From Octopus sinensis (taxonomy: Eukaryota), in contig NC_043004.1 in NCBI RefSeq assembly GCF_006345805.1, positions 7,874,001 to 7,938,000 on the forward strand: DNA of 64,000 bases. Reading direction: 5' to 3'. The stretch's first letter is position 1. Each line of letters opens with the position of its first letter. The position numbers and the translations under genes are program-made. The notes under the pieces were generated by a model that saw only the letters and a list, made by a program, of their open reading frames with translations, was not told where the DNA came from and did not search any database. This document shows, piece after piece, positions 20,631 to 64,000 of the stretch.

Positions 20631-23600
20631 TGGATTCCTCTCTACTTAGCTTACTTCTCTTAGGATCTACTTCGACATTTACTTTTAACAACCACACTAC
20701 TACTACTACTACTATAACTACTACTAACAACAACATCAACAGCAACAACAATAATAATAATAAAAATATAAACAACAAAGACTTGACAGATTGGTTTTAT
20801 CAGTATTTAATGAAAACTGGAAAGTGGACTGAGAGATAAGAACCGCAACCATTGTCAAGAATCATAATGTTTTACCATCATCATGCTCTCTTCTTATGTT
20901 TTTTTATTATTCTTATTCTTCTTCATATTATTATTTAAATTGTTATTTTGCCAAAAGAGTTGTTCCACACAAATATTGGGAGATCCAGGGTTGAGTAATT
21001 CGGAGAAAGAAAACTGGGGAAGTTTTAACTAAATTAAAAGAGGAAAAGGGAAAACAATTATATCCTTGCAGATGAGGGTGGAATCTAAATTATGAAAAAA
21101 AAAAAAAAAAAAAAAAAAATAAGAATCATAAAAACAAAAAAAACAACTTTACGGAACTGTTTTTGGTGAATTACATTTAAAGAAATTTTTCTTGTTATTT
21201 TTATTATTATTCTCCTCTTCTTGTTTAGGCAGCAAGCTGGCAGATTTGTTACCATGCTGGGTAAAATGCTTAGTGGCATTTTGTCTGTCTTTACGTTCTG
21301 AGTTCAAATTTCACCAGAGTTAACTTTGCCTTTCATTGTTTTGGGGTCAATGAATTAAGGACCAGTGAAACACTGGGGTCAATGTAATTGACTAGCCCCC
21401 CCCCCTCCCAATTTCAGGCCTTGTGCCTTTAGAAGAAAGGATTATTATTATTATTCTCCTCCTTGTTTAGGCAGCAAGCTGGCAGAATCGTTTCCATGCC
21501 GGACATCATGCTTGGCAGTGTTTCTTCAAACTCGCTGTTCTGAGTTCAAATGCTGCCAGGGTTGACTTTGCCCTTCATCCATTCAGGGTCAATAAAATAA
21601 GTACCAGTTGAACACCAGGGGTCGATGTAATTGACTTAGCCCCTCCCATCAAACTACTGGCCTTCTGCTAAAACTTAGTACCATTATTATTGATGGCAGA
21701 ATCAGAGTACTTCACAAGATTCCTGGTGGCTAGCTAAATCTCTGAATTGAAACCTTGCCAAAGACTTCCTTACCATCCATCTGTCTGGAATCAATAAAAT
21801 AGGGACCAGTGAAGCACTGGAGGATCTGTTAAATTCGTTGGACCCTCTTGCAAATTGTTGGTCCTTGTGGTAAAGTTAGGGATCTTCTTCTTCTTCTTAA
21901 CTGGTTGATTATCAGAATTGTTGGACAATTGCTTTGCAGTATTCGTTCTGGCTCTGATTCGGAGTTCAAGTGTTGCTATGGTAAGCTTTGTGTTATTCTT
22001 CTGGAGCTGATAAACTAACATACCAGTCATACGCTGGTTAGATGATATAAATGACAGTTTGCTCCTACCAAATTTCTGGTGGCAGATTGGTAGATTCAGC
22101 AGAGCAATGGGCCAAATGTCTTGCAGTTGTTGTTCTGACCTCTTACTTTTCTCCAAGTGTTAACTTTGCCTTTCACCATTCCAGGCTTTTATAATATTAT
22201 GAAACGGTCGAGTACTGAGGGCAAGGATTTAATCAATGAACTCCCTTTTCATAAATCTCTAGCCTTGTGCCTGTCTTAGGAACCATTAATAAGGTGGTGA
22301 GCTGTCAGAATCGTTATTGGACAAAATGCTTAGTGGCATTCAAATTCTGTCAAGTTTGATTTTACTTTTAATCCTTTCAGAATTGATGAAATAAGTACCA
22401 GTCATGCACTGGGGTCGATGTAATTGACTATCCCCCTTCCTGCAAATTTTCAGGCCTTGTACTTATTATAGAAAGGATTATTATGATGGATGCCTTGTGG
22501 TATTTAGTTTATATTTTGTGTCTCCTCCCCAAGGGTCATCTTTCACTTTTGTCTCTCTCGAGTCAATAGGAATAAAAATACCAGTTATGTTTTGGGATCA
22601 ATCTAATTGACCCTGCCTCTCCCCCCAAACTTTTTGGCTTTCTGCCAATATTAGTTGTTTTTTTTTTTTTTTCTTAGGTTGCTTTTTTTGCTGTTATAGA
22701 AACATTGATTTTCTCCTTCACTATAAGACAATTGTGGTTTTTTTAATAATTTATTTCTGTGTGGGATCTAGATTTCAACAATCTCATTTTTATATGTTAA
22801 AGCTATTATAATTATTATTATTATTACACTTTGTTAATAGACTTTTCAATTTTCTTGAAAAGTTATGTCATCTCAATGTTTCCATGTATATATGTGTGGC
22901 TATGTATGCGCGTATGTGTGTGTATGTAATCACATATGTACATATCTATATATATATGTGTGTATGTATGCATTTACAGAGTGTGTGTGTGTGTGAACTT
23001 AAGCTAAATTTCTTTCCATGTTTTTTTTTCTTCCATAACAATGTGTTTCTTTTTGTTATGTTATAATAAAATATTTTTATTTCATTCCATGAAAAGCTAA
23101 CAGTCCCTTTTATTGTGTGCAAAACTGAATTTCTTCCTTGAAAGGCTAAAAGTTGCCATAAATAAAAAAAAAAATAACTAGAGAAAGTATTAAAAAAATT
23201 AGACAAAAGACTAACAAGAAAAAGAAATCCTGAACGTTTTACTAAAACTATTGATATTCATTGGAATATAGGTTTTATTTTCTTATCTTTGCTCCTAAAT
23301 CTGGTCAGCTTTTGAAAGATTAGAAGTTGATTGCAAGAAATGTGAAAATCCATCAAGTGAAACTGAGTGGTTCTAATCAGACATGGCAGATTGAAAGAAA
23401 AAAATTGAAGAAATTTTTGCATTACTCCTTCAACCTGTTTAATTAAAGAATTATTAAAAAGCATAGAAGCATTCTCTAGTTGTTTGTCACCAATATGTTG
23501 AGGGAAAACTCGGCACTCGTGCACTAAGGTGAGTGAGCATTGATGTTAGACTGCTCTAACGAATGTCTGTTAACGATGTAATACTGACCAAATCTCTTTT

Positions 23601-23720
23601 CTCATTGTCACAAGTATTGTTTATTCCTAATTATTTATTTACTCTTTCTCTCTCAAATGTGTCTGAAACGGTACCAATCTATGAACCCTAAAGAAATCTC
23701 TGTTCACTAAATTTATGATA

Positions 23721-23937
23721 AACCCTTTAGCATTTCAGATTCCGCTGTCAAATGTAATGTTTATCAGTTCATATTGTTTTGAATTAATCCTGCATTATCT
23801 CTTAGCTTTTAGATTTCGATGATGTGAGTGTTTATTTTTAGAACGGCATTGTAGGATAGACGTGAGAGGCTGGATCTGGCCAATTTGAACAGGAAAACAA
23901 GTGGAATATTTGAGCCTGGTATGGTCTGTCTAAATGC
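23721..23937. mobile_element. Non-autonomous DNA element with a piggyBac-like aaccctttagcatt end (also in units B and D)
   Basis: Left end aaccctttagcatt. Right end only partly matched (taaatgc). Family assignment is inference. Confidence 0.4.
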
Positions 23938-26900
23938 GAGCATTGTATTGTGTGAGCATGCACCCATTTACATGTGTGTGTGTGTGCTGAAAGTGAACTG
24001 GGCTTTGCTCTACTTTCTCAATCTTTAAAGTCTAGGGAGGCCATTTTACCATTGTTCCATCTTTGAGAATACTTGTGAGATATAGCTTGGATAAATTGAA
24101 ATTATTTCAAAGCCTTGGTTGACAACAGTTTCTCTTCTTTTAAAAAGAAAATTCATTCTGTTGAAGCATCTCTGTTTGTATATTGAAGCAAGAATCCCGT
24201 TATTCTATAAATTATAAGGGGTGGCGTGAACTGACAGAATGGTTGGAATGCTGGAAACAATAGAGCTTAGCAGCATTCTCTCTGGCTTTGAAACTCTGTG
24301 TTCAAATGTTACTGAGCTCAACTTTACCTTTCATCTCTACCTGCAGTCACTAAAATATGTACCAGTTGAGCATGGGGTGGTGATGTAAACAACTACCCCC
24401 CCTCCCCAGTCCACCCTAATTTCAGGCCTTGTGCCTCTAGCAGACAATTATTACTATAACTTATAATGGTAGAAGCTTCATTATCAAATATTGGTAACAA
24501 TGGTAGTCTGTTTAAATGATAATTTGAATATTTAACGAGAACAAGTTTTATAGTCACACCTGTGATAGGTAAATACAGAAAATGAAATAGCAACAGCATT
24601 AGATATTGATTGTTATATGATGAGGCCAGGCATGTTCCTCTTCAGAATATTGGCTTGAATCCAGCTTGGAGGACAACTTCCATTTTTATGTCTTTGAATT
24701 TTATTTTGAGAGAAGAACCAATTCATTGTGTCCAATATTTCACTATCTTTCTGTCATCTTTCAGCTCATTTTCCATCTTTTTACCTGTCTGTATGATATT
24801 TAAAAAAAAAATTAAATTAAAAAGGCCAAAAAAAAATGACAGAAGGCAGCTTTTGTTTTGAAAGAAAGCTGTAATTTCTATAACTGGAAGTGGAACAAAC
24901 TTGGATGTGAAGAGGAGGTGGAGGTGGGGAAATGAAAATGTGATAAAAAATGTTTTCTATGGAATCAGTTTTAATGTGAATTATACCAAGAGATATTTCG
25001 GAATATTTCAGAAGGATTGGATTATTTTCTTGGAACCTTAAAAAAAGATCTTCATTTGGAGGTCTTTGATTTGCCATTCTTTGTCAGAATTTATCACAAC
25101 TGAATTATAAAACAAGGATAATGAAAAATCATTTTGATTTTATGTTGAAAAGCGACAAACTTTTGGAGACTGTAAAACCATTTAACCATTCTCGTTTGTG
25201 AATTATATTTTGTCAGTTGATGACGTTTGTTATTCCTGTCTAATATCAAATCATGTCTGCATTTTTTTGCCATTTTCTGTGTGAAAAGAATCTGTCTATA
25301 ATTGTTTGTTGATGTAGGTTGGATAGGTCTGCAATGATTAGGATACACTTTAGCAGCTGGGTATCAGGATTTGTGTCATTAACTATATTATGATGTGAGT
25401 TTATTTATTTTATTTCTAAAATTTTCATTAATTTCGTGATGAATAACACTTTCTACTCAAGCACACAATGCCAGAACTGTGAGAGGGTTTTAGAGAGAAA
25501 GAGTCTCTACCCCCTTAATTGCTAATGAAAGGACACCCCTAAAATATCTGCTCCATAACATAGCGACCAATTCCACTTCAATCAGCATGGAACTATTAAC
25601 CATTCTTTCTTGTTTTGTTAAGTTTTTATTAATTATGGTTTTTACTTTTCAATCGGAAGAAGACACAGAAAAAAAAAATGTAGGTTTTGAGGTATTCAAT
25701 GTGAAATATTGTCTCGTAGTGGTTTTGTTTAACATGTTTAGTTGTACATTTTGTTTGCCTGACTTGAGGGACCACCTTGGTAGAACAACACTTTATTTTG
25801 CGACCACAGATTAATAAAATTAAACAAAATCCTCAAAAATTCTGAATATCTCTTGAATAAGCAAAAAATAAACAAGTACTTTGGTGTTCACTGCTGCACT
25901 TTTGGGACGGATTTATGATGGCTCAGAATTTATGATTTTTATGAAAAAGGAGTGGAGGAAGTCAGCCACACATCATTTTGGGGGATTGAAGGTTTTCATT
26001 TGATTTCATTAATTTCTTTCTTTTATAAATACAAAAAAATTTTTTTTTTGAAATTAGTAAAGCTGAAATGACTTGAACAAATTTAAAAGAAAAATGTTTT
26101 TTTCTAAAAATTATGGAAATATTTATTTCTTTTTTATTTGTGTGAATGGAATAAAGAAAAATAAATATTTTTCTTCAAAATGACCTCCTCATTCATCTTG
26201 GGATGTCTGAGGTTTATGTAATATTTTGTTTTGATGAATCTGCTATTTGTTCTAATTTAACCACTTCAATAATCTGTAATAAAATACCAAAAAAAAAAAA
26301 ATGGGCAATATGTTAAAATGACATAAAGACAAACAAAATTCTGTTTTCATTTTTTAAATTTTATTTTCAATTTGGAAATATTGAGCATCTTCTTGGCACA
26401 TATAATTTTGGTTGAGTGAATAACCGTTCATTTCAGTTGGATGTTTCCTTCCATTGAACAAAAGTCAAGCACGTACACACACACACACACACAACAGGAA
26501 TTTCTGCCTACCAAATTCAATCAAGGCTTCAGTCAGCCTAAGGCTATACCAGAAGACACTTGTCCAAGGTCTACTCAGCCACACTGTGGCACTTTGAGCA
26601 ATTGGTGTATGGTATTTAATTGTTGCTGCTCAGTCCAGCCTTCTTCTCCATAGCTCTGTCATATTTTCTGCCTTTAGCACGAAGCTTCACATTTTAGGAA
26701 TGGTCAAATTCATTCCAGAGTTTTTCACTAATAATTCTGGTCACTAGAATATTCACCATAGAGAGACGAAAAGCAAAAATCAACTTTGTGTTTGAATTCT
26801 AAATGTAAAGACAGGACATGTCTAAAATATTTCCAGGCAGTCTTTAATGCACCATTCTCTCATTTCGCTGCCCTTAAAGGCTAGACTAATAAACCAAATG

Positions 26901-29217
26901 AAATGCCGGCATTGTTTTGAAGTGCTCTCACTGATGGATGCACCATAAATTTCAGTTTTGACTTCTCATAACTTCATTAATTACGGCAGTTTGAGCTTTC
27001 TTGTTTCAAAATTTATTATTTAGTAGCTTTTGAACAGAAGTATTTTCATGTAGTAAAGAGTGTTTACCAACATAACAATTCTGTCAAATAATAATAATAA
27101 TTATGGAGTCCTGGTTTAGGATGAATGTTACTCTAATTTAGCCCCAGGAGACATCGTCTCCAGCTGGCTATACGACACAATCTGTGTCCTTATATTTTCG
27201 AACAAGGGAATCTAGCACCCCAACTCAGCTAAAAACAATATCTGTGTATCATGATTTCTCTTCATCAGCACAGAATAATTGTTCGGCTAGAGGTGGTGCT
27301 GCCAAATTCCTGTTTGGAATATATAGTTTTCAAAGGGACAACTAGTCACTGATCTATAAATTGCTACAAAGTACTGTTGCTGAATATCTCTTGTTGTGAT
27401 ATTAAAAAAAAAAAAAAAAAAAGAATTATTCCTGTTAAAATATTCCTTAGAAAGTTAAAGCTTTCTTTGCAAAATATTACCGTTGTTAGTGTTGTTACTG
27501 TTTGTCTTTGGATGGTGGGGTGGGGTGGTCAGGGGGCCTTTTTTCATGTCAGATACTCTGCCCGATATGCCCACCTTTATATTTACCTCTTACAACATAA
27601 CTGGGTGTATCTTTTTAAAAATAAAATTATAAAACCACACAACAAAAAGCAACTTGTTCCTTGCCCATCTTTTGCATCACACCGACACCCTGTGATGCTG
27701 AGAACAATTTTGATAACACAGAAATCAAATCTTGGTTAGTACAATGTATAGCCAACAGAACTATAGTCCATGGCATCAATGGAATGGAAAATCAAGTTGA
27801 CATCAGTTAAAACACAATTTTAAGACTTGTTATGTTATAGCTTTTAACGAAGAAGAGTAGCATCATTGATCCCTTTTCAGGGCTTTGAAGAATCCTGGGG
27901 TGAAAGTCACGATGTATAGTTTGACCTCAGACTAATTCAACAGTGTGCACTCAACTCTGGCAATAATATTTGAAGGTCAGGGGTCAAGGATTGGGGTTAA
28001 ATCTGAGAGAAGAGTTTAGTGTTCCATCCAATCACAAATACAGTCCGTTCGAAGGATTTCCGCTCCATCTCTGGGAATTTCATTTGAAATCAAGTTGATC
28101 TTAAAGCACTACATTGAACTCCATCGAGACTTGGTAAGGAAGTCGGGCTACTCAACAGAATCCTTCCAAAACTTATTTCATCAACTCTGAGCTGTTATGG
28201 TACAGTGCAAAACTTCTTAACACTCGCCATTTTGTTTCAGTGCAGTCCAGGCTTCAAACTAAAAGTCAAAAGAAATAGATAAAGAAAGCAACAAATAAAT
28301 AAAAACAGTCAACTGTTTCTAGTCGTGTTTTTAGTATTGGTGATGGGGAGGGTGGCGTTGGATTTGAAATGCAGACCAATGTAAATGAATTCGCTGCCAG
28401 GCGAGATACTGGTGGGTTATGTCCCTTCATAGGAAACACATACTTTCAGAGTTGTTACCCTTACACTCACCATTTAGTCTATTATTACCCATAACCTATT
28501 TCTTTACTACCCCTTGTTATTATTTTTGGCCTCGTCTACTATTCCTACACATATACACAAGCATACACATCTAGTACTGCAGATGTTTAAATTATAAATG
28601 TCACAATTTCTTGGGGGTTTATAAGTCATTTCTGATATAGCTCTTGTATCAGAAGAATTTGGGAAAGCATGAGACAGACAGAAAACGTTTGGAGAGTAAA
28701 GCGAAGACACCTGTATCACAGTCTATAAGAATTGGTCAGTAATTAATCTGACCAAATCTTGTGAAATGTTATTGGCCACGTGGCGAAATATTTTGATACC
28801 TGATAACATAAACTATTAGAAATATATATAAAAGTGAATACAGCAATGATAACGAGATTTTAACAGCTACAAATATTCTGCAGCAGAAAAAAAGTTACAT
28901 ATGTTTAAACAGATTTTTATCTGATTACAAATCTTTAATTCATATCTGAGTTAAGACAGCACGCGGCACAATTTTGAATCAACAAAATTCATTTTACGTG
29001 TACTTTAAATTTCCGAAAGTAGAGACAACATCAACTGTACTATATCGATTACTCTAAACATTCACTTGTTTATATTTCTATTTACTTAAAAATAACTGAA
29101 AATTAATTCGCGCTTATCACCTTGATACTTGTATAATAACGAAGACTTATGAATAAAGAATAGAAATTAATGAAATAAATAAGGAGAAAAAAGATTTTGA
29201 AATTTAAAAAAAAATTA

Positions 29218-29223
29218 TTTATT
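29218..29223 (-). terminator. Putative polyadenylation signal AATAAA of cyclin T-like copy A
   Basis: First canonical hexamer after the stop (~500 nt), followed on the minus strand by a U-rich tract. Equivalent sites at 44707-44712 and 53310-53315. Confidence 0.55.
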
Positions 29224-29716
29224 CTATAATACAAAAGTTTATGACAAATTAAAAGTAATGAAATGTTAGTTGTAAATCTGAATGGTTAAAAATAAAAGTA
29301 AAAAACTCACGATTTATATGGAAATAATTAGCAAATTAAGAGTCGTATAAAAATTGATGAAATATAATAAAAATGAATGAGACGTCGATTGAGATGATAT
29401 AGTGTTTGTATGTAGAGGAATGTGAGTGTAGAACATTGAGAATTAAAGAGAAATGTTTCCATGTTCAACTGTGTAAAGTTAATATGAATAAAATACATGT
29501 GAACTGTCGCAATAAAGAACGGTGAGAAATTGATGTCTATTTACATTTTATATACATTAAAACACACCTGAATGTAGCAGCAGGTTGTGTTACATATGCA
29601 CAGCCATAGAGAAAAAGTTCAATTCTTACTTTACTATGTAGGAAACAGTATGGACTTCGCTCACTATTATCATTTGTTAGGTTTTCTGTGTAATTTCTAT
29701 AGAGTGTAGAAATATG

Positions 29717-30634
29717 TTAGTCAGTTTTCAGCGCGTTGTCCGTGTTACTTGGCGACACGGATTTGTTTAAAAAGGGAAACTGTTTCTTGAAATCTGTGTC
29801 TGTGTTGTGAAGTACCTCAAGGAAATCAACCACTAATTCATCCAATAATTGTTCATTGAGAGAAGTGTCCATATAAAAATGCCATGGATTTTGTTGGGAA
29901 GACAACGGAATCTTCCAGTTACCCCATTCAATAAACAAATGTATACAGATAGATGCGATAGTTTTTGCCGTATATTTGAGAGAGAACTTCGTTAAAATCA
30001 GACAGCATGTAGCAAACTGGTTAATTATTTTCACTAATTTACCTTCGAGTTTGATTATGTTACATACTTTGATAATATGAGATTGGGGTAGTGTAATGCG
30101 AAAATCGAAGTTTAAACAAACTAAAAGGGCTTCTTCATAAAGGAAAAAGTCTTTGGCTATCCGATTAATGGTAGTTTTGTTTTTTTCTAAATGTAGATAT
30201 TGTTGGAAATATGTTTGACTTTCGACAATCACTTGCTCAACAGCAAGCAATTTATCATCGAATTTAGCAGCGAAAAACAAACACACGGGTCCCATGAGTT
30301 TATAACTAAACTGGTGGAAGGAGTTATACATATAGAATCGGTGCATATAAACTACGGCAATGTTTAGTATATATTCGCTTAACATCAATCGTTGGTTAAT
30401 GTATAACATAAACATACCTGTTTTCTGACGATAAAGTAATTCGTTTTCATAGGTAAAGTTATCAGGTTGATATTTTCGCTTGAAAATCTCAACAATTTGT
30501 TCTTCGCTGAAAATCCAGTCTGTTTTTCGTGGCGCATTTCCATTGGAGCTTTCAGGTAAATCATTCATCGGAGTTTCATTAGTTTGTTGATTATCAGCAA
30601 TTTCCACCTGTAAGGAATTCTCAGTATTCGCCAT
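29717..30634 (-). CDS. CCNT: Cyclin T-like protein, copy A: intronless, 305 aa, cyclin boxes only
   Basis: ATG at 30632-30634 (MANTENS...) and TAA at 29717. Colinear with the cyclin T N-terminal domain: WIFSEEQI, ELLYRQ, AVVYMHRFY, CLFFAAKFDD, YEEALLVCLNFDF, FSLKYT, WGNWKIP, LLDELVVDFLEVL. The track start at 30796 is a TTG and is not used. Confidence 0.93.
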   Translation of the reverse strand: MANTENSLQVEIADNQQTNETPMNDLPESSNGNAPRKTDWIFSEEQIVEIFKRKYQPDNFTYENELLYRQKTGMFMLYINQRLMLSEYILNIAVVYMHRFYMYNSFHQFSYKLMGPVCLFFAAKFDDKLLAVEQVIVESQTYFQQYLHLEKNKTTINRIAKDFFLYEEALLVCLNFDFRITLPQSHIIKVCNIIKLEGKLVKIINQFATCCLILTKFSLKYTAKTIASICIHLFIEWGNWKIPLSSQQNPWHFYMDTSLNEQLLDELVVDFLEVLHNTDTDFKKQFPFLNKSVSPSNTDNALKTD

Positions 30635-30802
30635 TTGATCTATGTAAAAATAAATCTCGTTCTTTATGTCTTTTTGAGTTAATCGATAAAGTTTCGGCTG
30701 TTTGGCGTCTGAAATCAGTATTTTCTTGGAGAGTTCGGTTGGAAAAATTGCTTTCGTGGTCAGTGGGTATTGGCGAAGCGGAAGCAGCGGGAGCAAAAAC
30801 TT

Positions 30803-30837
30803 GACTGTCCCCTGTCACGGACCCTCTTTCTTATATA
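30803..30837 (-). promoter_or_regulatory. Core promoter of cyclin T-like copy A: TATA box (TATATAAG, 30830-30837) and Inr-like ACAGTC with A at 30806
   Basis: Minus strand reads gTATATATAAGaaagagggtccgtgacaggggACAGTC. The candidate +1 A lies 31 nt from the TATA T. Same TATA at 46295-46302 and 54999-55006. Confidence 0.62.
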
Positions 30838-52353: not shown

Positions 52354-52421
<68 letters not shown>

Positions 52422-53492: not shown

Positions 53493-53885
53493 CAGGAGTA
53501 AAAATTAAGAGTCGTATAAAAATAGATGAAATATAATAAAAATGAATGAGACGTCGATTGAGATGATATAGTGTTTGTATGTAGAGGAATGTGAGTGTAG
53601 AACATTGAGAATTAAAGAGAAATGTTTCCATGTTCAACTGTGTAAAGTTAATATGAATAAAATACATGTGAACTGTTGCAATAAAGAACAGTGAGAAATT
53701 GATGTCTATTTACATTTTATATACATTAAAACACACCTGAATGTAGCAGCAGGTTGTGTTACATATGCCCAGCCATAGAGAATAAGTTCAATTCTTACTT
53801 TACTATGTAGGAAAGAGTATGGACTTCGCTCACTATTATCATTTGTTAGGTTTTCTGTGTAATTTCTATAGAGTGTAGAAATATG

Positions 53886-54803
53886 TTAGTCAGTTTTCAG
53901 CGCGTTGTCCGTGTTACTTGGCGACACGGATTTGTTTAAAAAGGGAAACTGTTTCTTGAAATTTGTGTCTGTGTTGTGAAGTACCTCAAGGAAATCAACC
54001 ACTAATTCATCCAATAATTGTTCATTGAGAGAAGTGTCCATATAAAAATGCCATGGATTTTGTTGGGAAGACAACGGAATCTTCCAGTTACCCCATTCAA
54101 TAAACAAATATATACAGATAGATGCGATAGTTTTTGCTGTATATTTGAGAGAGAACTTCGTTAAAATCAGACAGCATGTAGCAAACTGGTTAATTATTTT
54201 CACTAATTTATCTTCAAGTTTGATTATGTTACATACTTTGATAATATGAGATTGGGGTAGTGTAATGCGAAAATCGAAGTTTAAACAAACTAAAAGGGCT
54301 TCTTCATAAAGGAAAAAGTCTTTGGCTATCCGATTAATGGTAGTTTTGTTTTTTTCTAAATGTAGATATTGTTGGAAATATGTTTGACTTTCGACAATCA
54401 CTTGCTCAACAGCAAGCAATTTATCATCGAATTTAGCAGCGAAAAACAAACACACGGGTCCCATGAGTTTATAACTAAACTGGTGGAAGGAGTTATACAT
54501 ATAGAATCGGTGCATATAAACTACGGCAATGTTTAGTATATATTCGCTTAACATCAATCGTCGGTTAATGTATAACATAAACATACCTGTTTTCTGACGA
54601 TAAAGTAATTCGTTTTCATAGGTAAAGTTATCAGGTTGATATTTTCGCTTGAAAATCTCAACAATTTGTTCTTCGCTGAAAATCCAGTCTGTTTTTCGTG
54701 GCGCATTTCCATTGGAGCTTTCAGGTAAATCATTCATCGGAGTTTCATTAGTTTGTTGATTATCAGCAATTTCCACCTGTAAGGAATTCTCAGTATTCGC
54801 CAT
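53886..54803 (-). CDS. CCNT: Cyclin T-like protein, copy C: intronless, 305 aa (308 aa if the upstream ATG at 54812 is used)
   Basis: Open frame. Differs from copy A at 6 sites (Q81R, G198D, H232Y, D281N, plus 2 synonymous). Has an extra in-frame ATG giving an MDQ extension. Confidence 0.93.
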   Translation of the reverse strand: MANTENSLQVEIADNQQTNETPMNDLPESSNGNAPRKTDWIFSEEQIVEIFKRKYQPDNFTYENELLYRQKTGMFMLYINRRLMLSEYILNIAVVYMHRFYMYNSFHQFSYKLMGPVCLFFAAKFDDKLLAVEQVIVESQTYFQQYLHLEKNKTTINRIAKDFFLYEEALLVCLNFDFRITLPQSHIIKVCNIIKLEDKLVKIINQFATCCLILTKFSLKYTAKTIASICIYLFIEWGNWKIPLSSQQNPWHFYMDTSLNEQLLDELVVDFLEVLHNTDTNFKKQFPFLNKSVSPSNTDNALKTD

Positions 54804-57414
54804 TTGATCCATTTAAAAATAAATCTCGTTCTTTATCTCTTTTTCAGTTAATCGATAAAGTTTCGGCTGTTTGGTGTCTGAAATCAGTATTTTCTTGGAG
54901 AATTCGGTTGGAAAAATTGTTTTCGTGGTCAGTGTGTGTTGGCGAAGCGGTAGCAGCGGGAGGAAAAACTTCACTGTCCCCTGTCACGGACCCTCTTTCT
55001 TATATATACCCCAACAGGTGTCGCCTGCCGAAAGGGGCGAGCGGAAGTGGATCCCGGGAATCTAGCCTAATTAAAGATGCGTCATAAACGCCGATGGAGT
55101 GTAAACTTACCTCCAAGTAAAATAGTCTTTTAATTGAATTCATAGAAGATAGAAATTTATAAATTGAAGCTCACCACATCTATATTAGCAAAAGCAGAAC
55201 AGATTTATAAAATATTTTAAAATTATACTTTCATTAATTTTGTTATATTTGTATTTTAACATGTATATTAAACCTTTTTCTGAATATCGACAATTAACTG
55301 CTAATTTTTTTTATTTAAATGTTTAACATTACTTTGTCACGCATAACATATGGGGATTTGCCGTTTAAGTATAAAAATAAAAATAACTTAAAATATATCT
55401 GCTTCGTATTTTGCTTCATACAAACAAAAATACATATCGTTGAAATCTGTTTGCTTTTCCAACATAAATAAACAACTATAAAAAAGTTGTTTATGTAAAC
55501 GACTTAACCACGACTTTGTACACAAACACACAGAGAAAGACTAACAGCTACGCATGTGACGAATCGCTTTTAATGAAAATCACTTTTATTGTGAAAAAGA
55601 ACCAGGAGAACTTATAAAAATGCATATTTTTAAATTGTCTGAAAATTTTCAAACTTGGTATATTAATGAATTTTCTCACACTGAATTTGGTGTTGTTATT
55701 CAATTGTTGCAGAAAAATTTGAGAAGCATGTTATAGAGGCTTAAAGGTTGATTATTTTCATCGAATAATGAAGTAGGATTTGAAAAGCCGGCATTTTCTG
55801 CGTGATAGCTGTGCATAGCAACATGACAATGTTAGACAAAACATTACGACGACGTCGACAGAAGTTTTAATAAGTTTTACTTTTGAATATAATCTCTACA
55901 GATTTATGAGAGACCGTCTCCCTACGTGTCATTAATAAATTTTAATGAATGAAATCATGCGAAATGTTGTAAGAGGCATATAAAGAATATAAAAAGGCCA
56001 AATGGTGAGTGAGGTGGTGACAGGACAACAACAGACGTGTAAAGTAGACGTGTTTGGAAAGCAGACACTACCTCGACTTGTTACCATGGAAACTAGCACC
56101 GATGTGTTTGTGGTTTTCGATTGGCTAAAATTACTCAAAAATTTACAAATTTTAAATGCTATTAACATTATATTTATTTTTTTATGGCGAAAAGGAATTT
56201 CGTTTCTATAATTAGCATAGAAAACGTACATCAATACACAGAAATTGCAATGAATTGGACGAAAATTAAACGAAATGAAAATTGTGAGTGAAAAGATCCA
56301 TAAAAAGTATGTTGCAAATGGAAACTGTATTATCGAATGTGTCGTTGCGAAGCGTCAGGATACTCTGATGTAGTTGTTGAATGGCCAAAGGCTTTCCAGG
56401 TACGACGACCTAGCAGAATGCAGCTGGGAGTGGACTATACAATGTCTGGTTTTATTTGTAAGACGGGAGGTTTTGAGCTGCTGAGGGACGATTGGCTATT
56501 GCCTGTTTAGATGACAATGGAAATTTAGACGAAATATTGTGTGATGTCTGGTGTCTGACTGGTCTTGTTTGGTTTTCTATTTCTTATGTGTAGAAAATAG
56601 CACATAAGGCTCAATCGAGGGCGATTGTCTTGTGATGTCCACGAAGGGCTATTATTGTATTCTGTTGCTCTAATTAATATTAATGATAATTTCTAGTAAA
56701 ACAGTCTACTATTTATGCTTCTCAGCATTACAAGGATGAACGGCAAATATGGGCCTTGACGTATTTGAACGCAGAACATAACTATATGCCAGCGTCCATT
56801 TCGCTTGATACTCTTTCGATTGTTCATCTGGAGGGGAAAGCCCTGTAGTGCTCTTACGAAAGTTTGTCTCTTATGGACAGGAAGGATTGTCATGAGGTTT
56901 CTAAGCACTTGGAAGATTGATGAAAACTTGTGTATCCCTAAGGTTAGAGGTAGTAACCCGCTAACCACATAATTCCTGTCAGGAATATGACCGAACGTGA
57001 GCCAAAACCAAAATAATAATTACAATAATAATCCTTTCCTCAATAGGCACAAGGCCAGAAATTATTGGGGAGGGGGGAGGCATTCGATCACATCGACCCC
57101 AGTATGTAACTAGTACTTCATCGACTCCGAAAGGATGAACGGCAAAGTCGACCTCGGGGGCATTTGAACTGAGAACGTAGCGGCAGACGAAATACCTATT
57201 TCTTTACTACCCACAAGGGAATAAACACAGAGGGGACAAACAAGGACAGACAAACGGATTAAGTCGATTACATCGACCCCAGTGCGTAACTGGTCCTTAA
57301 TTTATCGACGCTGAGAGGATGAAAGGAAAAATCGACCTCGGCGGAATTTGAACTCAGAACGTAACGTCAGACGAAATACCGCTAAGCACTTAGTCCGGCA
57401 TATTAAAGATTCTA

Positions 57415-57465
<51 letters not shown>

Positions 57466-58397
57466 GGAAAAACTTGGTAAATCGCATTGTACTTACGTGA
57501 GGCGACGTGCTAGAAGCATCGTTAGCACGTCGGAGAAAATGCTGAATGGCCTTATATTCCGGCACATTATCTTCTCAGCTGAATGTCCCGTCCGGTCAGG
57601 TTTGATTTTTACCATTTTGTGATGAATAAAATACCAGAGAATTACTTTCCAATGGTGTAGTCGCTTTGTCTCTTGTCTCCTCAAAATCGCTGCTGGCCCT
57701 TAACCCTGCCACAAACCGGTGACTCGTTCAGGGCAAATGTTGTGATCTTATTTGCCAAGATAAAGGACTTGATGGCTTCTAGGTCTGAATCAGAAAATAT
57801 AAATTACATTCAGCACATTTTTCTATCATCATGTGTTTTCAAACTCACCAACTCTCGTTACTTTTAGTATTAACAATAATATGTGACTTTTAGTAATGTT
57901 TCCATTGTAAACACGCGTCACGTTGTGAAGAAATTCGGGGGAAAAGGATTATTTTTCTGTAATGCTGAAGCATGAAATTTAAAATGAAATTATTTAGGAA
58001 AATTACACATCTTAAAGTCATCCTGCATCAGTGAGACACAAGCACACACACACACACACACATGCAGAGGTACACGATGCGATTCTGTGAGCTTACACAC
58101 GTTTGTGAGCGGGTAGCGATTCAAGGGAAATAACTAATGCAGATGGTAATTATCGGTTATTTGTTACCTGCCCTTCGCTGTTTATTTGGTCGTATTTTAC
58201 CTTATTTTAAGAAAAAAAGTAATTAAAATAAAGGTTTTAGAATATATCTAAAGATATGTAAACTTTCTTTAAAAATGTGTTTTTTGGAATAAAGAAATCG
58301 CGTCATGTAATTCCACACCATTTTACGCCATTCTATAAAATGCTTATTTGTGTTCCATGCAATGTTGTTTAGAGTGATCTGTCTTGGATGCTCAAAG

Positions 58398-58920
58398 GTA
58401 TCTATATGTGTATGTGTATGTGTGTATGTACGTATGTGTGTGTATGTATGCGTGTGTATGTATGTATGTATGTGTGTGTTGGTGTATGTATGTATGTGTG
58501 CTTGTATGTATGTATGTATGTATGTGTGTGTGCGTGTGTGTTTGTATGTATGTATCTGTGTGCGTACGTGCGTATGTATGTATGTATGTGAGTGTGTGCG
58601 TATGTATGTATGTGAGTGTGTGCGTGTGCTTGTATGTATTTATGTATGTATGTATGTGTGTGCGCGTTTGTTTGTATGTATGTATGTATGTACATATGTG
58701 TGTGTGTATGTATGTATGTATGTATGTATGTATGTGTTTATGTATGTATGTATGTGAGTGTGTGTGTATGTATGTGAGTGTGTGTGTATGTATGTATGTA
58801 TATGAGTGTGTGCGTGTGTATGTATGTGCGCGTGTTTGTATGTATGTATGTATGTATGTAAGTATGTGTGTGTATATATTTGTGTGTATGTATGTGTGTG
58901 TGTATGTGCATGTCTGTCTG
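58398..58920. repeat. Compound TG/TATG microsatellite, unit C, ending at the C/D junction
   Basis: Direct reading. About half the length of the A block. Confidence 0.95.
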
Positions 58921-59887
58921 TCTTGCAAATTGTTGGTCCTTGTGGTAAAGTTAGGGATCTTCTTCTTCTTCTTCTTAACTGGTTGATTATCAGAATTGTT
59001 GGACAATTGCTTTGCAGTATTCGTTCTGGCTCTGATTCGGAGTTCAAGTGTTGCTATGGTAAGCTTTGTGTTATTCTTCTGGAGCTGATAAACTAACATA
59101 CCAGTCATACGCTGGTTTAGATGATATAAATGACAGTTTGCTCCTACCAAATTCCTGGTGGCAGATTGGTAGAATCAGCAGAGCAATGGGCCAAATGTCT
59201 TGCAGTTGTTGTTCTGACCTCTTACTTTTCTCCAAGTGTTAACTTTGCCTTTCACCATTCCAGGCTTTTATAATATTATGAAACGGTCGAGTACTGAGGG
59301 CAAGGATTTAATCAATGAACTCCCTTTTCATAAATCTCTAGCCTTGTGCCTGTCTTAGGAACCATTAATAAGGTGGTGAGCTGTCAGAATCGTTATTGGA
59401 CAAAATGCTTAGCGGCATTCAGATTCTGTCAAGTTTGATTTTACTTTTAATCCTTTCAGAATTGATCAAATAAGTACCAGTCATGCACTGGGGTCGATGT
59501 AATTGACTATCCCCCTTCCTGCAAATTTTCAGGCCTTGTACCTATTATAGAAAGGATTATTATCATGGGATGCCTTGTGGTATTTAGTTTATATTTTGTG
59601 TCCCCTCCCCAAGGGTCATCTTTCACTTTTGTCTCTCTCGAGTCAATAGGAATAAAAATACCAGTTATGTTTTGGGATCAATCTAATTGACCCTGCCTCT
59701 CCCCCCCAAAAAAACTTTTTGGCTTTCTGCCAATATTAGTTGTTTTATTTTTTTTTCTTAGGCTGCTTTTTTTGCTGTTACAGAAACATTGATTTTCTCC
59801 TTCACTATAAGACAATTGTGGTTTTTTTAATAATTTATTTCTGTGTGGGATCTAGATTTCAACAATCTCATTTTTATATGTTAAAGC

Positions 59888-59923
<36 letters not shown>

Positions 59924-62900
59924 ACTTTGTTAATAGCCTTTTCAATTTTCTTGAAAAGTTATGTCATCTCAATGTTTCCATGTATATATGTGTGGCTATG
60001 TATGCGCGTGTGTGTGTGTATGTAATCACATATGTACATATCTATATATATATGTGTGTATGTATGCATTTACAGAATGTGTGTGTGTGAACTTAAGCTA
60101 AATTTCTTTCCATGTTTTTTTTTCTTCCATAACAATGTGTTTCTTTTTTTTCTTTTTGTTATGTTATAATAAAATATTTTTATTTCATTCCATGAAAAGC
60201 TAACAGTCCCTTTTATTGTGTGCAAAACTGAATTTCTTCCTTGAAAGGCTAAAAGTTGCCATAAATAAAAAAAAAAAAATAACTAGAGAAAGTATAAAAA
60301 AAATTAGACAAAAGACTAACAAGAAAAAAGAAATCCTGAACGTTTTACTAAAACTATTGATATTCATTGGAATATAGGTTTTATTTTCTTATCTTTGCTC
60401 CTAAATCTGGTCAGCTTTTGAAAGATTAGAAGTTGATTGCAAGAAATGTGAAAATCCATCAAGTGAAACTGACATGGCAGATTGAAAGAAAAAAAATTGA
60501 AGAAATTTTTGCATTACTCCTTCAACCTGTTTAATTAAAGAATTATTAAAAAGCATAGAAGCATTCTCTAGTTGTTTGTCACCAATATGTTGAGGGAAAA
60601 CTCGGCACTCGTGCACTAAGGTGAGTGAGCATTGATGTTAGACTGCTCTAACGAATGTCTGTTAATGATGTAACACTGACCAAATCTCTTTTCTCATTGT
60701 CAGAAGTATTGTCTATTCCTAATTATTTATTTACTCTTTCTCTCTCAAATGTGTCTGAAACGGTACCAATCTATGAACCCTAAAGAAATCTCTGTTCACT
60801 GAATTTATGATAAACCCTTTAGCATTTCAGATTCCGCTGTCAAATGTAATGTTTATCAGTTCATATTGTTTTGAATTAATCCTGCATTATCTCTTAGCTT
60901 TTAGATTTCGATGATGTGATTGTTTATTTTTAGAACGGCATTGTAGGATAGATGTGAGAGGCTGGATCTGGCCAATTTGAACAGGAAAACAAGTGGAATA
61001 TTTGAGCCTGGTATGGCCTGTTTAAATGCTGAGCATTGTATTGTGTGAGCGTGCACCCATTTACATGTGTGTGTGTGTGTGTGTGCTGAAAGTGAACTGG
61101 GCTTTGCTCTACTTTCTCAATCTTTAAAGTCTAGGGAGGCCATCTTACCATCGTTCCATCATTGAGAATACTTGTGAGATATAGCTTGGATAAATTGAAA
61201 TTACTTCAAAGCCTTGGTTGACAACAGTTTCTCTTCTTTTAAAAAGAAAATTCATTCTGTTGAAGCATCTCTGTTTGTATATTGTAGCAAGAATCCCATT
61301 ATTCTATAAATTATAAGGGGTGGCGTGAACTGACAGAATGGTTGGAATGCTGGAAACAATAGAGCTTAGCAGCATTCTCTCTGGCTTTCAAACTCTGTGT
61401 TCAAATGTTACTGAGCTCAACTTTACCTTTCATCCCTACCTGCAGTCACTAAAATATGTACCAGTTGAGCATGGGGTGGTGATGTAAACAACTACCCCCC
61501 CTCCCCAGTCCACCCTAATTTCAGGCCTTGTGCCTCTAGCAGACAATTATTACTATAACTTATAATGGTAGAAGCTTCATTATCAAATATTGTATTGGTA
61601 ACAATGAGAGTCTGTTTAAATGATAATTTGAATATTTAACGAGAACAAGTTTTATAGTCACACCTGTGATAGGTAAATACAGAAAATGAAATAGCAACAG
61701 CATTAGATATTGATTGTTATATGATGAGGCCGGGCATGTTCCTCTTCAGAATATTGGCTTGAATCCAGCTTGGAGGACAACTTCCATTTTTATGTCTTTG
61801 AATTTTATTTTGAGAGAAGAACCAATTCATTGTGTCCAATATTTCACTATCTTTCTGTCATCTTTCAGCTCATTTTCCATCTTTTTACCTGTCTGTATGA
61901 TATTTAAAAAAAAAATTAAATTAAAAAGGCCAAAAAAAAATGACAGAAGGCAGCTTTTGTTTTGAAAGAAAGCTGTAATTTCTATAACTGGAAGTGGAAC
62001 AAACTTTGATGTGAAGAGGAGGTGGAGGTGGGGAAATGAAAATGTGATAAAAAATGTTTTCTATGGAATCAGTTTTAATGTGAATTATACCAAGAGATAT
62101 TTCGGAATATTTCAGAAGGATTGGATTATTTTCTTGGAACCTTAAAAAAAGATCTTCATTTGGAGGTCTTTGATTTGCCATTCTTTGTCAGAATTTATCA
62201 CAACTGAATTATAAAACAAGGATAATGAAAAATCATTTTGATTTTTGATTTGATGTTGAAAAGCGATGAACTTTTGGAGACTGTAAAACCATTTAACCAT
62301 TCTCGTTTGTGAATTATATTTTGTCAGTTGATGACGTTTGTTATTCCTGTCTAATATCAAATCATGTCTGCATTTTTTTACCATTTTCTGTGTGAAAAGA
62401 ATCTGTCTATAATTTTTTGTTGATGTAGGTTGGATAGGTCTGCAATGATTAGGATACACTTTAGCAGCTGGGTATCAGAATTTGTGTCATTAACTATATT
62501 ATGATGTGAGTTTATTTATTTTATTTCTAAAATTTTCATTAATTTTGTGATGAATAACACTTTCTACTCAAGCACACAATGCCAGAACTGTGAGAGGGTT
62601 TTAGAGAGAAAGAGTCTCCACCCCCTTAATTGCTAATGAAAGGACACCCCTAAAATATCTGCTCCATAACATAACGACCAATTCCACTTCAATCAGCATG
62701 GAACTATTAACCATTCTTTCTTGTTTCGTTAAGTTCTTATTAATTATGGTTTTTACTTTTCAATCGGAAGAAGACAAAGAAAAAAAAATGTAGGTTTTGT
62801 GGTATTCAATGTGAAATATTGTCTCGTAGTGGTTTTGTTTAACATGTTTAGTTGTACATTTTGTTTGCCTGACTTGAGGGACCACCTTGGTAGAACGACA

Positions 62901-64000
62901 CTTTATTTTGCGACCACAGATTAATAAAATTAAACAAAATCCTCAAAAATTCTGAATATCTCTTGAATAAGCAAAAAATAAACAAGTACTTTGGTGTTCA
63001 CTGCTGCACTTTTGGGACGGATTTATGATGGCTCAGAATTTATGATTTTTATGAAAAAGGAGTGGAGGAAGTCAGCCACACATCATTTTGGGGGATTGAA
63101 GGTTTTCATTTGATTTCATTAATTTCTTTTTTTTATAAATACAAAAAAATCTTTTTTTTGAAATTAGTAAAGCTGAAATGACTTGAACAAATTTAAAAGA
63201 AAAATGTTTTTTTCTAAAAATTATGGAAATATTTATTTCTTTTTTATTTGTGTGAATGGAATAAAGAAAAATAAATGTTTTTCTTCAAAATGACCTCTTC
63301 ATTCATCTTGGGATGTCTGAGGTTTATGTAATATTTTGTTTTGATGAATCTGCTATTTGTTCTAATTTAACCACTTCAATAATCTGTAATAAAATACCAA
63401 AAAAAAAAAAAAAATGGGCAATATGTTAAAATGACATAAAGACAAACAAAATTCTGTTTTCATTTTTAAAATTTTATTTTCAATTTGGAAATATTGAGCA
63501 TCTTCTTGGCACATATAATTTTGGTTGAGTGAATAACTGTTCTTTTCAGTTGGATGTTTCCTTCCATTGAACAAAAGTCAAGCACGTACACACACACACA
63601 CACACAACAGGAATTTCTGCCTACCAAATTCAATCGAGGCTTCAGTCAGCCTAAGGCTATTCCAGAAGACACTTGTCCAAGGTCTACTCAGCCACACTGT
63701 GGCACTTTGAGCAATTGGTGTATGGTATTTAATTGTTGCTGCTCAGTCCAGCCTTCTTCTCCATAGCTCTGTCATATTTTCTGTCTTTAGCACGAAGCTT
63801 CACATTTTAGGAATGGTCAAATTCATTCCAGAGTTTTTCACTAATAATTCTGGTCACTAGAATATTCACCATAGAGAGACGAAAAGCAAAAATCAACTTT
63901 GTGTTTGAATTCTAAATGTAAAGACAGGACATGACTAAAATATTTCCAGGCAGTCTTTAATGCACCATTCTCTCATTTCGCTGCCCTTAAAGGCTAGACT
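58921..64000 (+). repeat. Segmental duplication unit D (partial, continues past the window end)
   Basis: tcttgcaaattgttgg at 58921 matches A 21846. The window end matches A 26887. Confidence 0.93.

What the first reader, a model, noticed from the sequence alone, without database searches (positions are those of the whole stretch)
21065..64000. Tandem amplicon of an intronless, truncated cyclin T gene: candidate lineage-specific P-TEFb variant system
Three intact copies of a 305-aa cyclin T-like ORF lie in a recent tandem array, convergent with TM9SF4 (seen). Canonical metazoan cyclin T genes are multi-exon, low-copy and much longer (established). An intronless, cyclin-box-only, dosage-amplified paralog with its own TATA/Inr and poly(A) signal points to a retrogene that gained a specialised role, such as an alternative CDK9 partner (inference). 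The left part occurs in A, B and D and the right part in A, B and C, so two haplotypes of one locus cannot explain it. I am not aware of a description of such an array but cannot search.
Basis: partly seen in the sequence, partly recalled or inferred. Interest (0 to 1): 0.92.

Follow-up and report, generated by a model that had tools for sequence, protein, structure and literature searches.

The report
Amplified intronless short cyclin T, octopus
Octopus sinensis carries six tandem copies of an old, fast-evolving, single-exon cyclin T gene reduced to the cyclin box; it looks functional, but its regulator-binding groove is rebuilt, so it is probably not an ordinary partner of the elongation kinase CDK9.

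Summary
The window (Octopus sinensis, C8:7,874,001-7,938,000) holds three intact 305/308-aa cyclin ORFs on the minus strand. They sit in a tandem array that extends beyond the window to six intact copies over about 68 kb, convergent with a TM9SF (EMP70) gene.

The protein is a genuine cyclin T-type double cyclin fold by Pfam, PDB sequence search and a structure model. A canonical multi-exon cyclin T spanning at least 60 kb lies on another chromosome (C17).

- **Age.** The gene is old, not recent. A single-exon 257-aa relative in Argonauta hians shares 20 identical derived residues with it. Only the amplification is recent: one copy in O. bimaculoides, at least two subtypes shared by O. sinensis and O. 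vulgaris.
- **CDK9 partner role.** This is untested, and the sequence casts doubt on it. The paralog keeps only 40-44% of near-invariant cyclin T positions, against 89% for its parent. All five HEXIM1/Tat-groove residues are replaced, and two positions needed for CDK9 binding in human cyclin T1 are changed.

The cyclin box is under purifying selection (dN/dS 0.41-0.47) and a TATA promoter is conserved. NCBI already labels the genes "cyclin-T1-like", but I found no paper on them. Expression was not shown.

The parts
13317..13631 (+). Exon of the neighbouring TM9SF (EMP70-family) gene, convergent with the cyclin array
   Evidence: Pfam EMP70 E 2.4e-19, profile positions 361-419 of 517. O. bimaculoides has an EMP70 gene in the same relative position and orientation. 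By projection from L015 that gene ends near window 20640.
21065..36435 (-). Long repeat unit A (about 15.4 kb), holding cyclin copy 1
   Evidence: Self-BLAST at 96-98% to unit B. It aligns collinearly over its whole length with the single-copy O. bimaculoides locus L015.
36436..53194 (-). Long repeat unit B, holding cyclin copy 2
53195..58920 (-). Short repeat unit C (gene, promoter and microsatellite; the roughly 8-kb 3' part is missing), holding cyclin copy 3
58921..64000 (-). Start of long unit D; it continues beyond the window, where copies 4-6 lie at window-frame 67314-68231, 75986-76903 and 84411-85328
29717..30634 (-). Cyclin T-like CDS copy 1 (305 aa; the upstream ATG is mutated to ATA)
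45206..46123 (-). Cyclin T-like CDS copy 2 (305 aa; upstream ATG mutated; 24-nt deletion in the 5' leader)
53886..54812 (-). Cyclin T-like CDS copy 3 (308 aa, starting at the conserved MDQ ATG)
30822..30849 (-). Conserved core promoter element CCTGTTGGGGTATATATAAGAAAGAGGG of copy 1 (TATA box about 200 nt upstream of the ATG). An ETS-like ACTTCCGC motif lies just upstream and GGGGACAGTSAA about 30 nt downstream.
   Evidence: Exact match in all three window copies, none expected by chance. Conserved in O. bimaculoides, O. vulgaris and the Logan species.
46287..46314 (-). The same promoter element, copy 2
54991..55018 (-). The same promoter element, copy 3
29218..29223 (-). First AATAAA downstream of copy 1 (493 nt after the stop codon); a candidate poly(A) signal, use not verified
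34211..35172 (.). About 1 kb (TATG)n microsatellite at the promoter-distal end of the unit. Unit junctions fall in or next to it, so it is a likely substrate for unequal crossing-over.
   Evidence: Tandem Repeats Finder, 242 copies. The junction at 58921 follows the equivalent microsatellite at 58036-58921.
21197..21673 (.). Two copies of a 242-bp dispersed (SINE-like) repeat at the left edge of the unit
   Evidence: The same element matches many other places in the window.

Best explanation
This is a functional, octopod-specific subfamily of cyclin T. I call it the short cyclin T.

**Shown.**
- It is a single-exon gene encoding only the double cyclin fold plus short disordered tails.
- It sits beside the octopus's own canonical, multi-exon cyclin T in a protein tree.
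- It was already intronless and box-only in the common ancestor of Octopus and Argonauta.
- It has since evolved far faster than its parent, while the cyclin box stayed under purifying selection.
- It has its own conserved TATA promoter.
- It is single-copy in O. bimaculoides. It was amplified to six copies in O. sinensis after that species split off and before O. sinensis and O. vulgaris separated. The array is still being remodelled: it mixes long and short units, and the unit order differs in O. vulgaris.

**Inferred.**
- It arose by retroposition of a cyclin T mRNA.
- Unequal crossing-over at the flanking (TATG)n microsatellite and SINE-like repeats produced the array.
- The protein still acts as a cyclin-fold partner in the transcription-elongation machinery, but it has left the canonical P-TEFb control circuit. 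The groove that binds HEXIM1 (and HIV Tat) in human cyclin T1 is completely rebuilt, and three replacements in or beside it (Q50R, Q56E, F176Q) are then held identical across octopods. That suggests a new conserved ligand rather than decay. The His-rich C-terminal region that targets the polymerase tail is absent.
- In Octopus, Glu at position 107 and Cys at position 143 suggest weakened or altered CDK9 binding.

The most likely mode of action is therefore one of two: a HEXIM-insensitive minimal cyclin for CDK9 or a related kinase, or a competitor that titrates cyclin T partners. Copy number would set the dose.
For: **Real and cyclin T-type**
- Pfam Cyclin_N plus CycT2-like_C.
- Best PDB sequence hits are human cyclin T1/T2 at E 2e-44 to 9e-38, against 1e-12 for cyclin K.
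- AlphaFold model: mean pLDDT 78.6, confident over residues 38-290. The top 17 Foldseek hits are CycT1/T2 with target TM-score 0.83-0.92.

**Copies**
- Six intact copies in the genome, all on C8.

**Parent gene**
- Canonical exons run from C17:17,609,051 to about 17,673,000, with at least six separate exons covering residues 117-253 alone.
- The parent keeps 89% of near-invariant cyclin T positions; the paralog keeps 40%.

**Origin and age**
- In the tree, the short clade (100/99) sits beside the O. sinensis canonical gene (86/80).
- The Argonauta gene is a single exon of 774 nt.
- Octopus and Argonauta share 20 identical derived residues at positions at least 90% conserved in canonical cyclin T. 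Sixteen of those states never occur among 115 canonical sequences.
- The family was found only in Octopus and Argonauta.

**Selection**
- Eight intact ORFs across three Octopus lineages.
- Cyclin-box dN/dS is 0.41-0.47, Fisher p 0.001-0.017; the tails are at 1 or above.

**Promoter**
- Conserved TATA block.

**Timing of the amplification**
- O. bimaculoides has one unit between flanks orthologous to both flanks of the O. sinensis array.
- O. vulgaris copy a groups with O. sinensis copies 1 and 2 (99/99) and copy b with copies 3-6. Copies differ by 2.4% or less, against 8% from O. bimaculoides.

**Rebuilt groove**
- Q46, Q50, Q56 and Y175 are invariant in 115 of 115 canonical sequences and F176 in 111. 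All five are replaced in every paralog.
- In human CycT1, Y175S/E lose HEXIM1 binding, V107E loses CDK9 and HEXIM1 binding but keeps AFF4, and Q56R and Q97K weaken binding (PMC4226998).
- T143A lowers CDK9 binding about five-fold (PMC8648303).
Against: - No expression data could be reached. The Logan contigs are collinear with the genome, so they cannot separate RNA from DNA. The spliced O. vulgaris models are only a hint, because that annotation pipeline mixes transcript, protein and ab initio evidence.
- dN/dS of 0.4-0.8 is high for a cyclin and only moderately significant.
- Functional inferences rest on mapping human point mutations onto a protein that is 33% identical. Compensating changes are likely. 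Several residues needed for CDK9 binding are kept (R68, P85, K93, V104, E137, L203). Argonauta keeps a hydrophobic residue at 107 and a serine at 143.
- There are no retroposition hallmarks. A copy retaining the 5' part of the parent is atypical of LINE-mediated retrocopies.
- The Octopus-Argonauta grouping joins two very long branches, although the shared derived residues argue against an artefact.
- Support for the position beside the octopus canonical gene is moderate (86/80), and the canonical sequence in the tree is partial (142 aa).
Confidence: 0.6

Rival explanations
1. It is an alternative, fully competent CDK9 activator: a minimal P-TEFb cyclin used in one tissue such as the germline, with amplification serving only to raise the dose.
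For: Human cyclin T1 residues 1-280 suffice to bind CDK9 (PMC8648303). The fold is cyclin T-like at about 2 A rmsd. Several CDK9-relevant residues are kept: R68, P85, K93, V104, E137 and L203. The box is under purifying selection.
Against: V107 is hydrophobic in all 115 canonical sequences and is Glu in the Octopus paralog. T143 is conserved in 97% of canonical sequences and is Cys in Octopus. The invariant stretch 94-101 (VEEQPRKL) reads FDDKLL(A/E)V in O. sinensis and O. bimaculoides. The human equivalents V107E and T143A impair CDK9 binding. No binding data exist.
Confidence: 0.25
2. The array consists of decaying or non-functional retrocopies whose open frames persist by chance or because the duplication is recent.
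For: dN/dS is relatively high at 0.5-0.8 over the whole ORF. Copies 1 and 2 have lost the upstream ATG, and copy 2 has a 24-nt deletion in the leader. No expression evidence was obtained.
Against: Frames of 298-308 codons are open in eight Octopus copies from three lineages, and a 257-codon frame is open in Argonauta, in a genome of about 33% G+C. Box dN/dS is significantly below 1. The promoter is conserved across species. Identical derived residues persist across a 33%-identity divergence.
Confidence: 0.07
3. The tandem array is an assembly artefact: haplotigs or a mis-expanded repeat.
For: Read depth could not be examined. The O. sinensis assembly is a single source.
Against: Units differ from each other by 2-8% and come in two architectures. 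An independent O. vulgaris assembly holds at least two full copies 15.8 kb apart, with four consecutive gene models. The subtypes are shared between the two species.
Confidence: 0.03
4. The gene was captured by, or acquired from, a virus or mobile element that carried a host-derived cyclin, and the array marks its insertion.
For: The gene is intronless and truncated and has a compact TATA promoter. Other single-exon cyclin ORFs exist in this genome, one of them next to an integrase-like ORF.
Against: The unit holds no transposase, reverse transcriptase, integrase or viral domain and no Rfam match. The locus is syntenic and single-copy in O. bimaculoides. The tree places the clade next to the host's own cyclin T.
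Confidence: 0.05

Closest known systems
Canonical metazoan cyclin T (human CCNT1/CCNT2, Drosophila CycT), the cyclin subunit of P-TEFb
   Same: Both have two cyclin folds of the T type. The best sequence and structure matches are CycT1/T2. Core residues are kept: the MHRFY motif, K93, E137, W207, W210, W221 and Y224.
   Different: Identity is only about 33%, whereas canonical boxes are 70-76% identical between phyla. The gene is single-exon. The TAR-recognition motif, coiled-coil, His-rich and PEST regions are absent. The HEXIM1/Tat groove is replaced. The gene is tandemly amplified.
Human cyclin T1 V107E, an engineered dominant-negative (PMC4226998)
   Same: The Octopus paralog naturally carries Glu at the aligned position (E138 in copy 1). 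In all 115 canonical sequences that position is hydrophobic.
   Different: The human mutant differs from wild type at one residue, whereas the octopus protein differs at about two thirds of positions. Argonauta has Ile there. No binding data exist for the octopus protein.
Cyclin K (partner of CDK12/13)
   Same: It matches the same Pfam C-terminal domain family and has a short cyclin-box-centred architecture.
   Different: The match is much weaker: E 1e-12 against 2e-44 by sequence, and 1e-8 against 1e-14 by structure at 20% identity.
Lineage-specific, tandemly amplified retrogene families (general class)
   Same: It shows intron loss relative to a multi-exon parent, fast protein evolution, and copy number that varies between close species.
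   Different: Expression pattern and any conflict or germline role are unknown here. The retroposition hallmarks are eroded.

Membership tests
Cyclin T subfamily (P-TEFb cyclins) | Two tandem cyclin folds matching Cyclin_N and the CycT2-like C-terminal domain | tested here: met
   Pfam PF00134 at 41 bits (cut-off 23) and PF21797 at 119 bits (cut-off 27). The AlphaFold core is all-helical with pLDDT mostly above 84 over residues 40-290.
Cyclin T subfamily (P-TEFb cyclins) | Closer to cyclin T than to cyclins K, L, C or H | tested here: met
   By sequence, T1 scores 2e-44 against 1e-12 for K. By Foldseek, ranks 1-17 are T1/T2, followed by K, L, C and H. The tree places it inside lophotrochozoan cyclin T, next to the octopus canonical gene. 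No K or L outgroup was in the tree.
Cyclin T subfamily (P-TEFb cyclins) | Conservation of the near-invariant cyclin T residues | tested here: not met
   It keeps 40-44% of positions that are at least 95% conserved in 115 canonical sequences. The lowest value for any canonical sequence is 84-91%, and the octopus parent keeps 89%.
Cyclin T subfamily (P-TEFb cyclins) | HEXIM1/7SK (and Tat) binding groove: Q46, Q50, Q56, Y175, F176 | tested here: not met
   All five are replaced in Octopus (L, R, E, N, Q) and in Argonauta (R, R, E, K, Q). The functional meaning comes from human mutants.
Cyclin T subfamily (P-TEFb cyclins) | Binds and activates CDK9 | not testable with these tools
   Sequence indicators only, and they are mixed. 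R68, P85, K93, V104, E137 and L203 are kept. V107 is Glu, T143 is Cys and Q97 is Lys in Octopus.
Cyclin T subfamily (P-TEFb cyclins) | Long C-terminal region (TRM, coiled coil, His-rich, PEST) | tested here: not met
   The ORF ends about 20 residues after the box. Canonical proteins are 700-1500 aa long.
Processed retrogene | Lacks the introns of a multi-exon parent gene elsewhere in the genome | tested here: met
   The CDS is a single exon covering CycT1 residues 10-254. The parent on C17 has at least six exons for residues 117-253 and spans at least 60 kb.
Processed retrogene | Poly(A) tract and target-site duplications at the insertion | tested here: inconclusive
   None was seen in the 3' flank. 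These are expected to be eroded in a gene older than the Octopus/Argonauta split. No dedicated search for target-site duplications was made.
Tandem gene array formed by unequal crossing-over | Head-to-tail units in one orientation, with junctions at repeats and copy number varying between relatives | tested here: met
   Six same-strand copies in long and short units. Junctions fall at the (TATG)n microsatellite and SINE-like repeats. There is one copy in O. bimaculoides and at least two in O. vulgaris in a different unit order.

The most novel reading that the evidence does not exclude
The short cyclin T is an octopod innovation in the control of transcription elongation. It would be a HEXIM/7SK-insensitive, box-only cyclin whose rebuilt groove binds a new, conserved ligand. 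Its rapid evolution and species-specific amplification would reflect an ongoing conflict or specialisation, for example germline-specific elongation control or a decoy against a virus or mobile element that hijacks P-TEFb.
Probability: 0.2. Interest if true: 0.7.

Novelty: new variant of a known kind. Interest (0 to 1): 0.47.

Why it matters
The cyclin T box is among the most conserved regulatory folds in animals. Here it is 70-76% identical between molluscs and arthropods, and its HEXIM1-binding groove is invariant in 115 of 115 sequences.

A natural paralog has rebuilt that groove, dropped the polymerase-targeting tail, kept evolving quickly under constraint for the whole history of incirrate octopods, and recently multiplied six-fold in one species pair. 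That makes it a ready-made natural experiment on which surfaces of cyclin T are needed for what. It is also a candidate lineage-specific regulator in animals known for unusual gene regulation.

It also gives a clean, datable example of array birth by unequal crossing-over, running from one copy to six between close Octopus species.

Tried and rejected
- **Fold asymmetry.** I hypothesised that the CDK-binding N-terminal fold had decayed while the AFF4-binding C-terminal fold was retained, because Pfam scored them 41 and 119 bits. This was rejected: both folds keep the same share of conserved positions (44% and 40%) and the same identity to the consensus (33% and 32%).
- **T149.** I first counted T149 to Arg as a loss of a CDK9 contact. 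This was rejected: T149 is Ala in 77% of canonical sequences, so it is not informative outside vertebrates.
- **Logan contigs as transcript evidence.** They are collinear with the genome, so they are inconclusive. The SRA run numbers appear in no paper, so the third species stays unidentified.
- **Synteny in Argonauta.** No EMP70 exon lies within 10 kb on either side of the gene. The only matches are a repeat shared with the window.
- **Other content of the unit.** No Pfam domain in nine further open frames, no Rfam family, and no ORF of 150 aa or more apart from microsatellite frames.
- **Full canonical gene.** One whole-genome search failed.
- **Literature.** Searches for the gene name with octopus, for cyclin T retrogenes, and for the accession numbers found nothing relevant.
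Full report
**Where the window comes from.** The whole-genome search places the window at G000:C8:7,874,001-7,938,000 of a 2.72-Gb assembly. The exact protein of the first ORF is on record on a 107,269,306-bp contig. The three other 305-aa members of its 90% cluster on that same contig are named 'cyclin-T1-like [Octopus sinensis]' (XP_029640159, XP_029640160, XP_029640162). The window is 31-45% G+C and has no Ns.

**Checking the observation.** Three intact ORFs lie on the minus strand at 29717-30634 (305 aa), 45206-46123 (305 aa) and 53886-54812 (308 aa). All three hit Pfam Cyclin_N and CycT2-like_C above the curated cut-offs.
- Unit A 21065-36435 and unit B 36436-53194 are full-length.
- Unit C 53195-58920 has only the gene-proximal 'right' part.
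- Unit D starts at 58921 with the 'left' part and runs off the window.

After fetching the flanks I found that the array runs to about window-frame 89,400 (about 68 kb). It holds six intact same-strand copies in three long and three short units. An EMP70/TM9SF exon on the plus strand at 13317-13631 confirms the convergent neighbour. I did not test whether it is TM9SF4 specifically.

**Not an assembly artefact.** Units differ by 2-8% and have two architectures. The independent O. vulgaris assembly (OX597821.1) holds two full-length copies 15.8 kb apart. Four consecutive O. vulgaris gene models fall in the same 90% cluster. In a tree of the 1.8-kb gene cores, O. vulgaris copy a groups with O. 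sinensis copies 1 and 2 (99/99) and copy b with copies 3-6. So at least two unit subtypes predate the split of those two species.

**Timing of the amplification.** O. bimaculoides has exactly one unit. Its locus L015 aligns collinearly with the whole of unit A. On one side it continues past 21065 into the TM9SF gene. On the other side it continues into sequence orthologous to the far flank of the O. sinensis array, at window-frame 90,081-107,882. Copies are 2.4% or less apart, while O. bimaculoides is about 8% away. The amplification therefore followed the O. bimaculoides split and preceded the O. sinensis/O. vulgaris split. The unit order next to the flank differs in O. vulgaris, so the array is still being remodelled. 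Junctions fall at a roughly 1-kb (TATG)n microsatellite and at SINE-like repeats. That fits unequal crossing-over, which is my inference.

**What the protein is.**
- By sequence, the best solved relatives are human cyclin T1 (E 2e-44, residues 38-284 against 10-254) and T2. Cyclin K reaches only 1e-12.
- An AlphaFold model built on a 30-sequence alignment is confident over residues 38-290 (mean pLDDT 78.6). It is all-helical, and both tails (1-37 and 292-305) are disordered.
- Its 17 best Foldseek matches in the PDB are cyclin T1/T2 (target TM-score 0.83-0.92), followed by cyclin K.

So it is a cyclin T-type double cyclin fold with nothing after it. Canonical cyclin T proteins are 700-1500 aa long.

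**The parent gene.** The CycT2-like_C profile hits, besides the six copies, one partial match at C17:17,669,394. tBLASTn with canonical mollusc cyclin T finds collinear small exons there for residues 117-253. A whole-genome search adds N-terminal exons back to C17:17,609,051. The canonical gene therefore has many exons and spans at least 60 kb, and the array is not the genome's only cyclin T. The C17 exons are 73% identical to Haliotis and keep 89% of near-invariant cyclin T positions.

**Origin and age.**
- A scan of 1.84 billion representative proteins finds nothing closer than 33-34% identity outside Octopus, and those hits are long canonical cyclin T proteins.
- One hit is different: a 257-aa protein of Argonauta hians (GAB1600563.1). 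Its gene is a single exon of 774 nt.
- In a maximum-likelihood tree, the Octopus proteins and the Argonauta protein form a clade (100/99). That clade sits next to the O. sinensis canonical gene (86/80), inside the lophotrochozoan sequences.
- Both branches are very long, so I looked for independent evidence. At positions at least 90% conserved in 115 canonical sequences, Octopus and Argonauta share 20 identical derived residues, and 16 of those states never occur in any canonical sequence. That supports a single origin.
- A profile of the short proteins finds the family only in Octopus (three 90% clusters) and Argonauta.

The gene is thus old, predating the Octopus/Argonauta split, and was intronless and box-only from early on. 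Retroposition from the canonical cyclin T is the simplest origin, but it is an inference. No poly(A) tract or target-site duplications remain, and keeping the 5' rather than the 3' part of the parent is unusual for LINE-mediated copies.

**Is it functional?**
- All eight Octopus ORFs are open: six O. sinensis copies, O. bimaculoides, and a third species known only from Logan assemblies of SRR118693xx.
- Between species, dN/dS over the cyclin box is 0.41-0.47 (Fisher p 0.001-0.017). The two tails are at 1 or above.
- About 420 nt upstream of the ATG are strongly conserved in all three lineages. They include an ETS-like ACTTCCGC, CCTGTTGGGGTATATAWAAGA, and GGGGACAGTSAA about 30 nt further on. 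The 28-nt core occurs exactly three times in the window, with none expected by chance.
- AATAAA motifs lie 493-592 nt after the stop codons.
- Expression itself could not be shown. The Logan contigs are collinear with the genome.
- The four O. vulgaris models join the first 72 codons, through an internal AG|GTATGT donor conserved in every copy and species, to a small exon about 9.5 kb downstream. The annotation pipeline behind them mixes Iso-Seq, RNA-seq, protein and ab initio evidence (PMC10700109), so this is only a hint of transcription.

**How it may work.** I aligned the paralogs with 115 canonical cyclin T boxes and numbered the columns after human cyclin T1.
- The paralogs keep only 40-44% of positions that are at least 95% conserved, and this is the same in both folds. 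No canonical sequence keeps less than 84%.
- Q46, Q50, Q56 and Y175 are invariant in 115 of 115 canonical sequences and F176 in 111. The mutational study treats these residues as the HEXIM1/Tat binding pocket of human cyclin T1. All five are replaced in every paralog.
- Q50R, Q56E and F176Q are identical in Octopus and Argonauta although the two proteins are only 33% identical overall. I read that as a rebuilt, then conserved, surface.
- In human cells Y175S/E abolish HEXIM1 binding but not CDK9 binding. V107E abolishes CDK9 and HEXIM1 binding but not AFF4 binding. Q56R and Q97K weaken binding (PMC4226998). T143A lowers CDK9 binding about five-fold (PMC8648303).
- The Octopus paralog has N at 175, E at 107 (always hydrophobic in canonical sequences), E at 56, K at 97 and C at 143. 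Argonauta has I at 107 and S at 143.
- Residues kept include N60 (Octopus only), R68, P85, K93, V104, E137, L203, W207, W210, W221 and Y224.

My reading, all inference, is that control by HEXIM/7SK has been lost and that CDK9 binding in Octopus is altered or weakened. The protein would then act either as a minimal, HEXIM-insensitive cyclin for CDK9 or a related kinase, or as a competitor for cyclin T partners. Copy number would set the dose.

**Two ideas of mine failed.** The C-terminal fold is not better conserved than the N-terminal fold. T149 is not conserved outside vertebrates, so its replacement says nothing.

**Comparison with what is known.** The protein passes the structural and phylogenetic tests for cyclin T. 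It fails the tests of residue conservation, of the HEXIM groove and of the C-terminal region. CDK9 binding cannot be tested here. I therefore file it as a divergent variant within the cyclin T family, not as an ordinary P-TEFb cyclin.

NCBI's automatic annotation already calls the genes 'cyclin-T1-like' in O. sinensis and O. bimaculoides. I found no paper that mentions them, the array, or cyclin T retrogenes.

**Verdict.** It is a new variant of a known kind and of moderate interest.

Noticed in passing
G000:C4:67756225-67787423 and C4:67894279-67894653 (loci L042, L050, L051, L059, L061): A second cluster of apparently single-exon short cyclin ORFs: four hits with 277-282-aa open frames, one of them interrupted by a stop, plus a 298-aa frame 107 kb away. 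They carry an A/B-type Cyclin_N fold and are unrelated to cyclin T. Tandemly amplified box-only cyclins may be a recurring theme in this genome.
   Followed up: partly
G000 unplaced scaffolds C10954, C12468, C12461 (two sites) and C12597 (loci L033, L034, L036-L038): Five near-identical Cyclin_N hits (E about 1e-27), four in open frames of 201-229 aa (the fifth, L037, 188 aa by the search table). At L037 the longest ORF is instead integrase-like.
   Followed up: no
window 30416, 45905 and 54585 (minus strand; the G of GT), CDS nt 216-223: A consensus 5' splice donor AG|GTATGT sits inside the cyclin ORF at codons 72/73. It is conserved in all six copies, in O. bimaculoides and in the Logan species. 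The O. vulgaris gene models splice from it to an exon about 9.5 kb downstream near the unit boundary, giving 77-87-aa products. It may be a real alternative isoform or an annotation artefact.
   Followed up: partly
window 30643-30645 (copy 1) and the equivalent position in copy 2: The upstream start codon (MDQ-M...) is conserved in copies 3-6, O. bimaculoides and the Logan species. It is ATA in copies 1 and 2 and in O. vulgaris copy a. This subtype marker is shared between the two species. Copy 2 also has a 24-nt deletion in the 5' leader that removes a TTTCAG acceptor-like site.
   Followed up: yes
window 3672-4579 and window-frame 108689-109579; also L063:17476-17836: A dispersed repeat with coding potential (about 53% amino-acid identity over 113 residues between the Octopus window and the Argonauta locus). 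It is probably a transposable element and was not identified.
   Followed up: no
G000:C8695:3573-3779: A 98-aa open frame on an unplaced scaffold matches residues 4-72 of canonical cyclin T at 41% identity. It may be an unplaced first exon, an allelic copy of the canonical gene, or another fragment.
   Followed up: no
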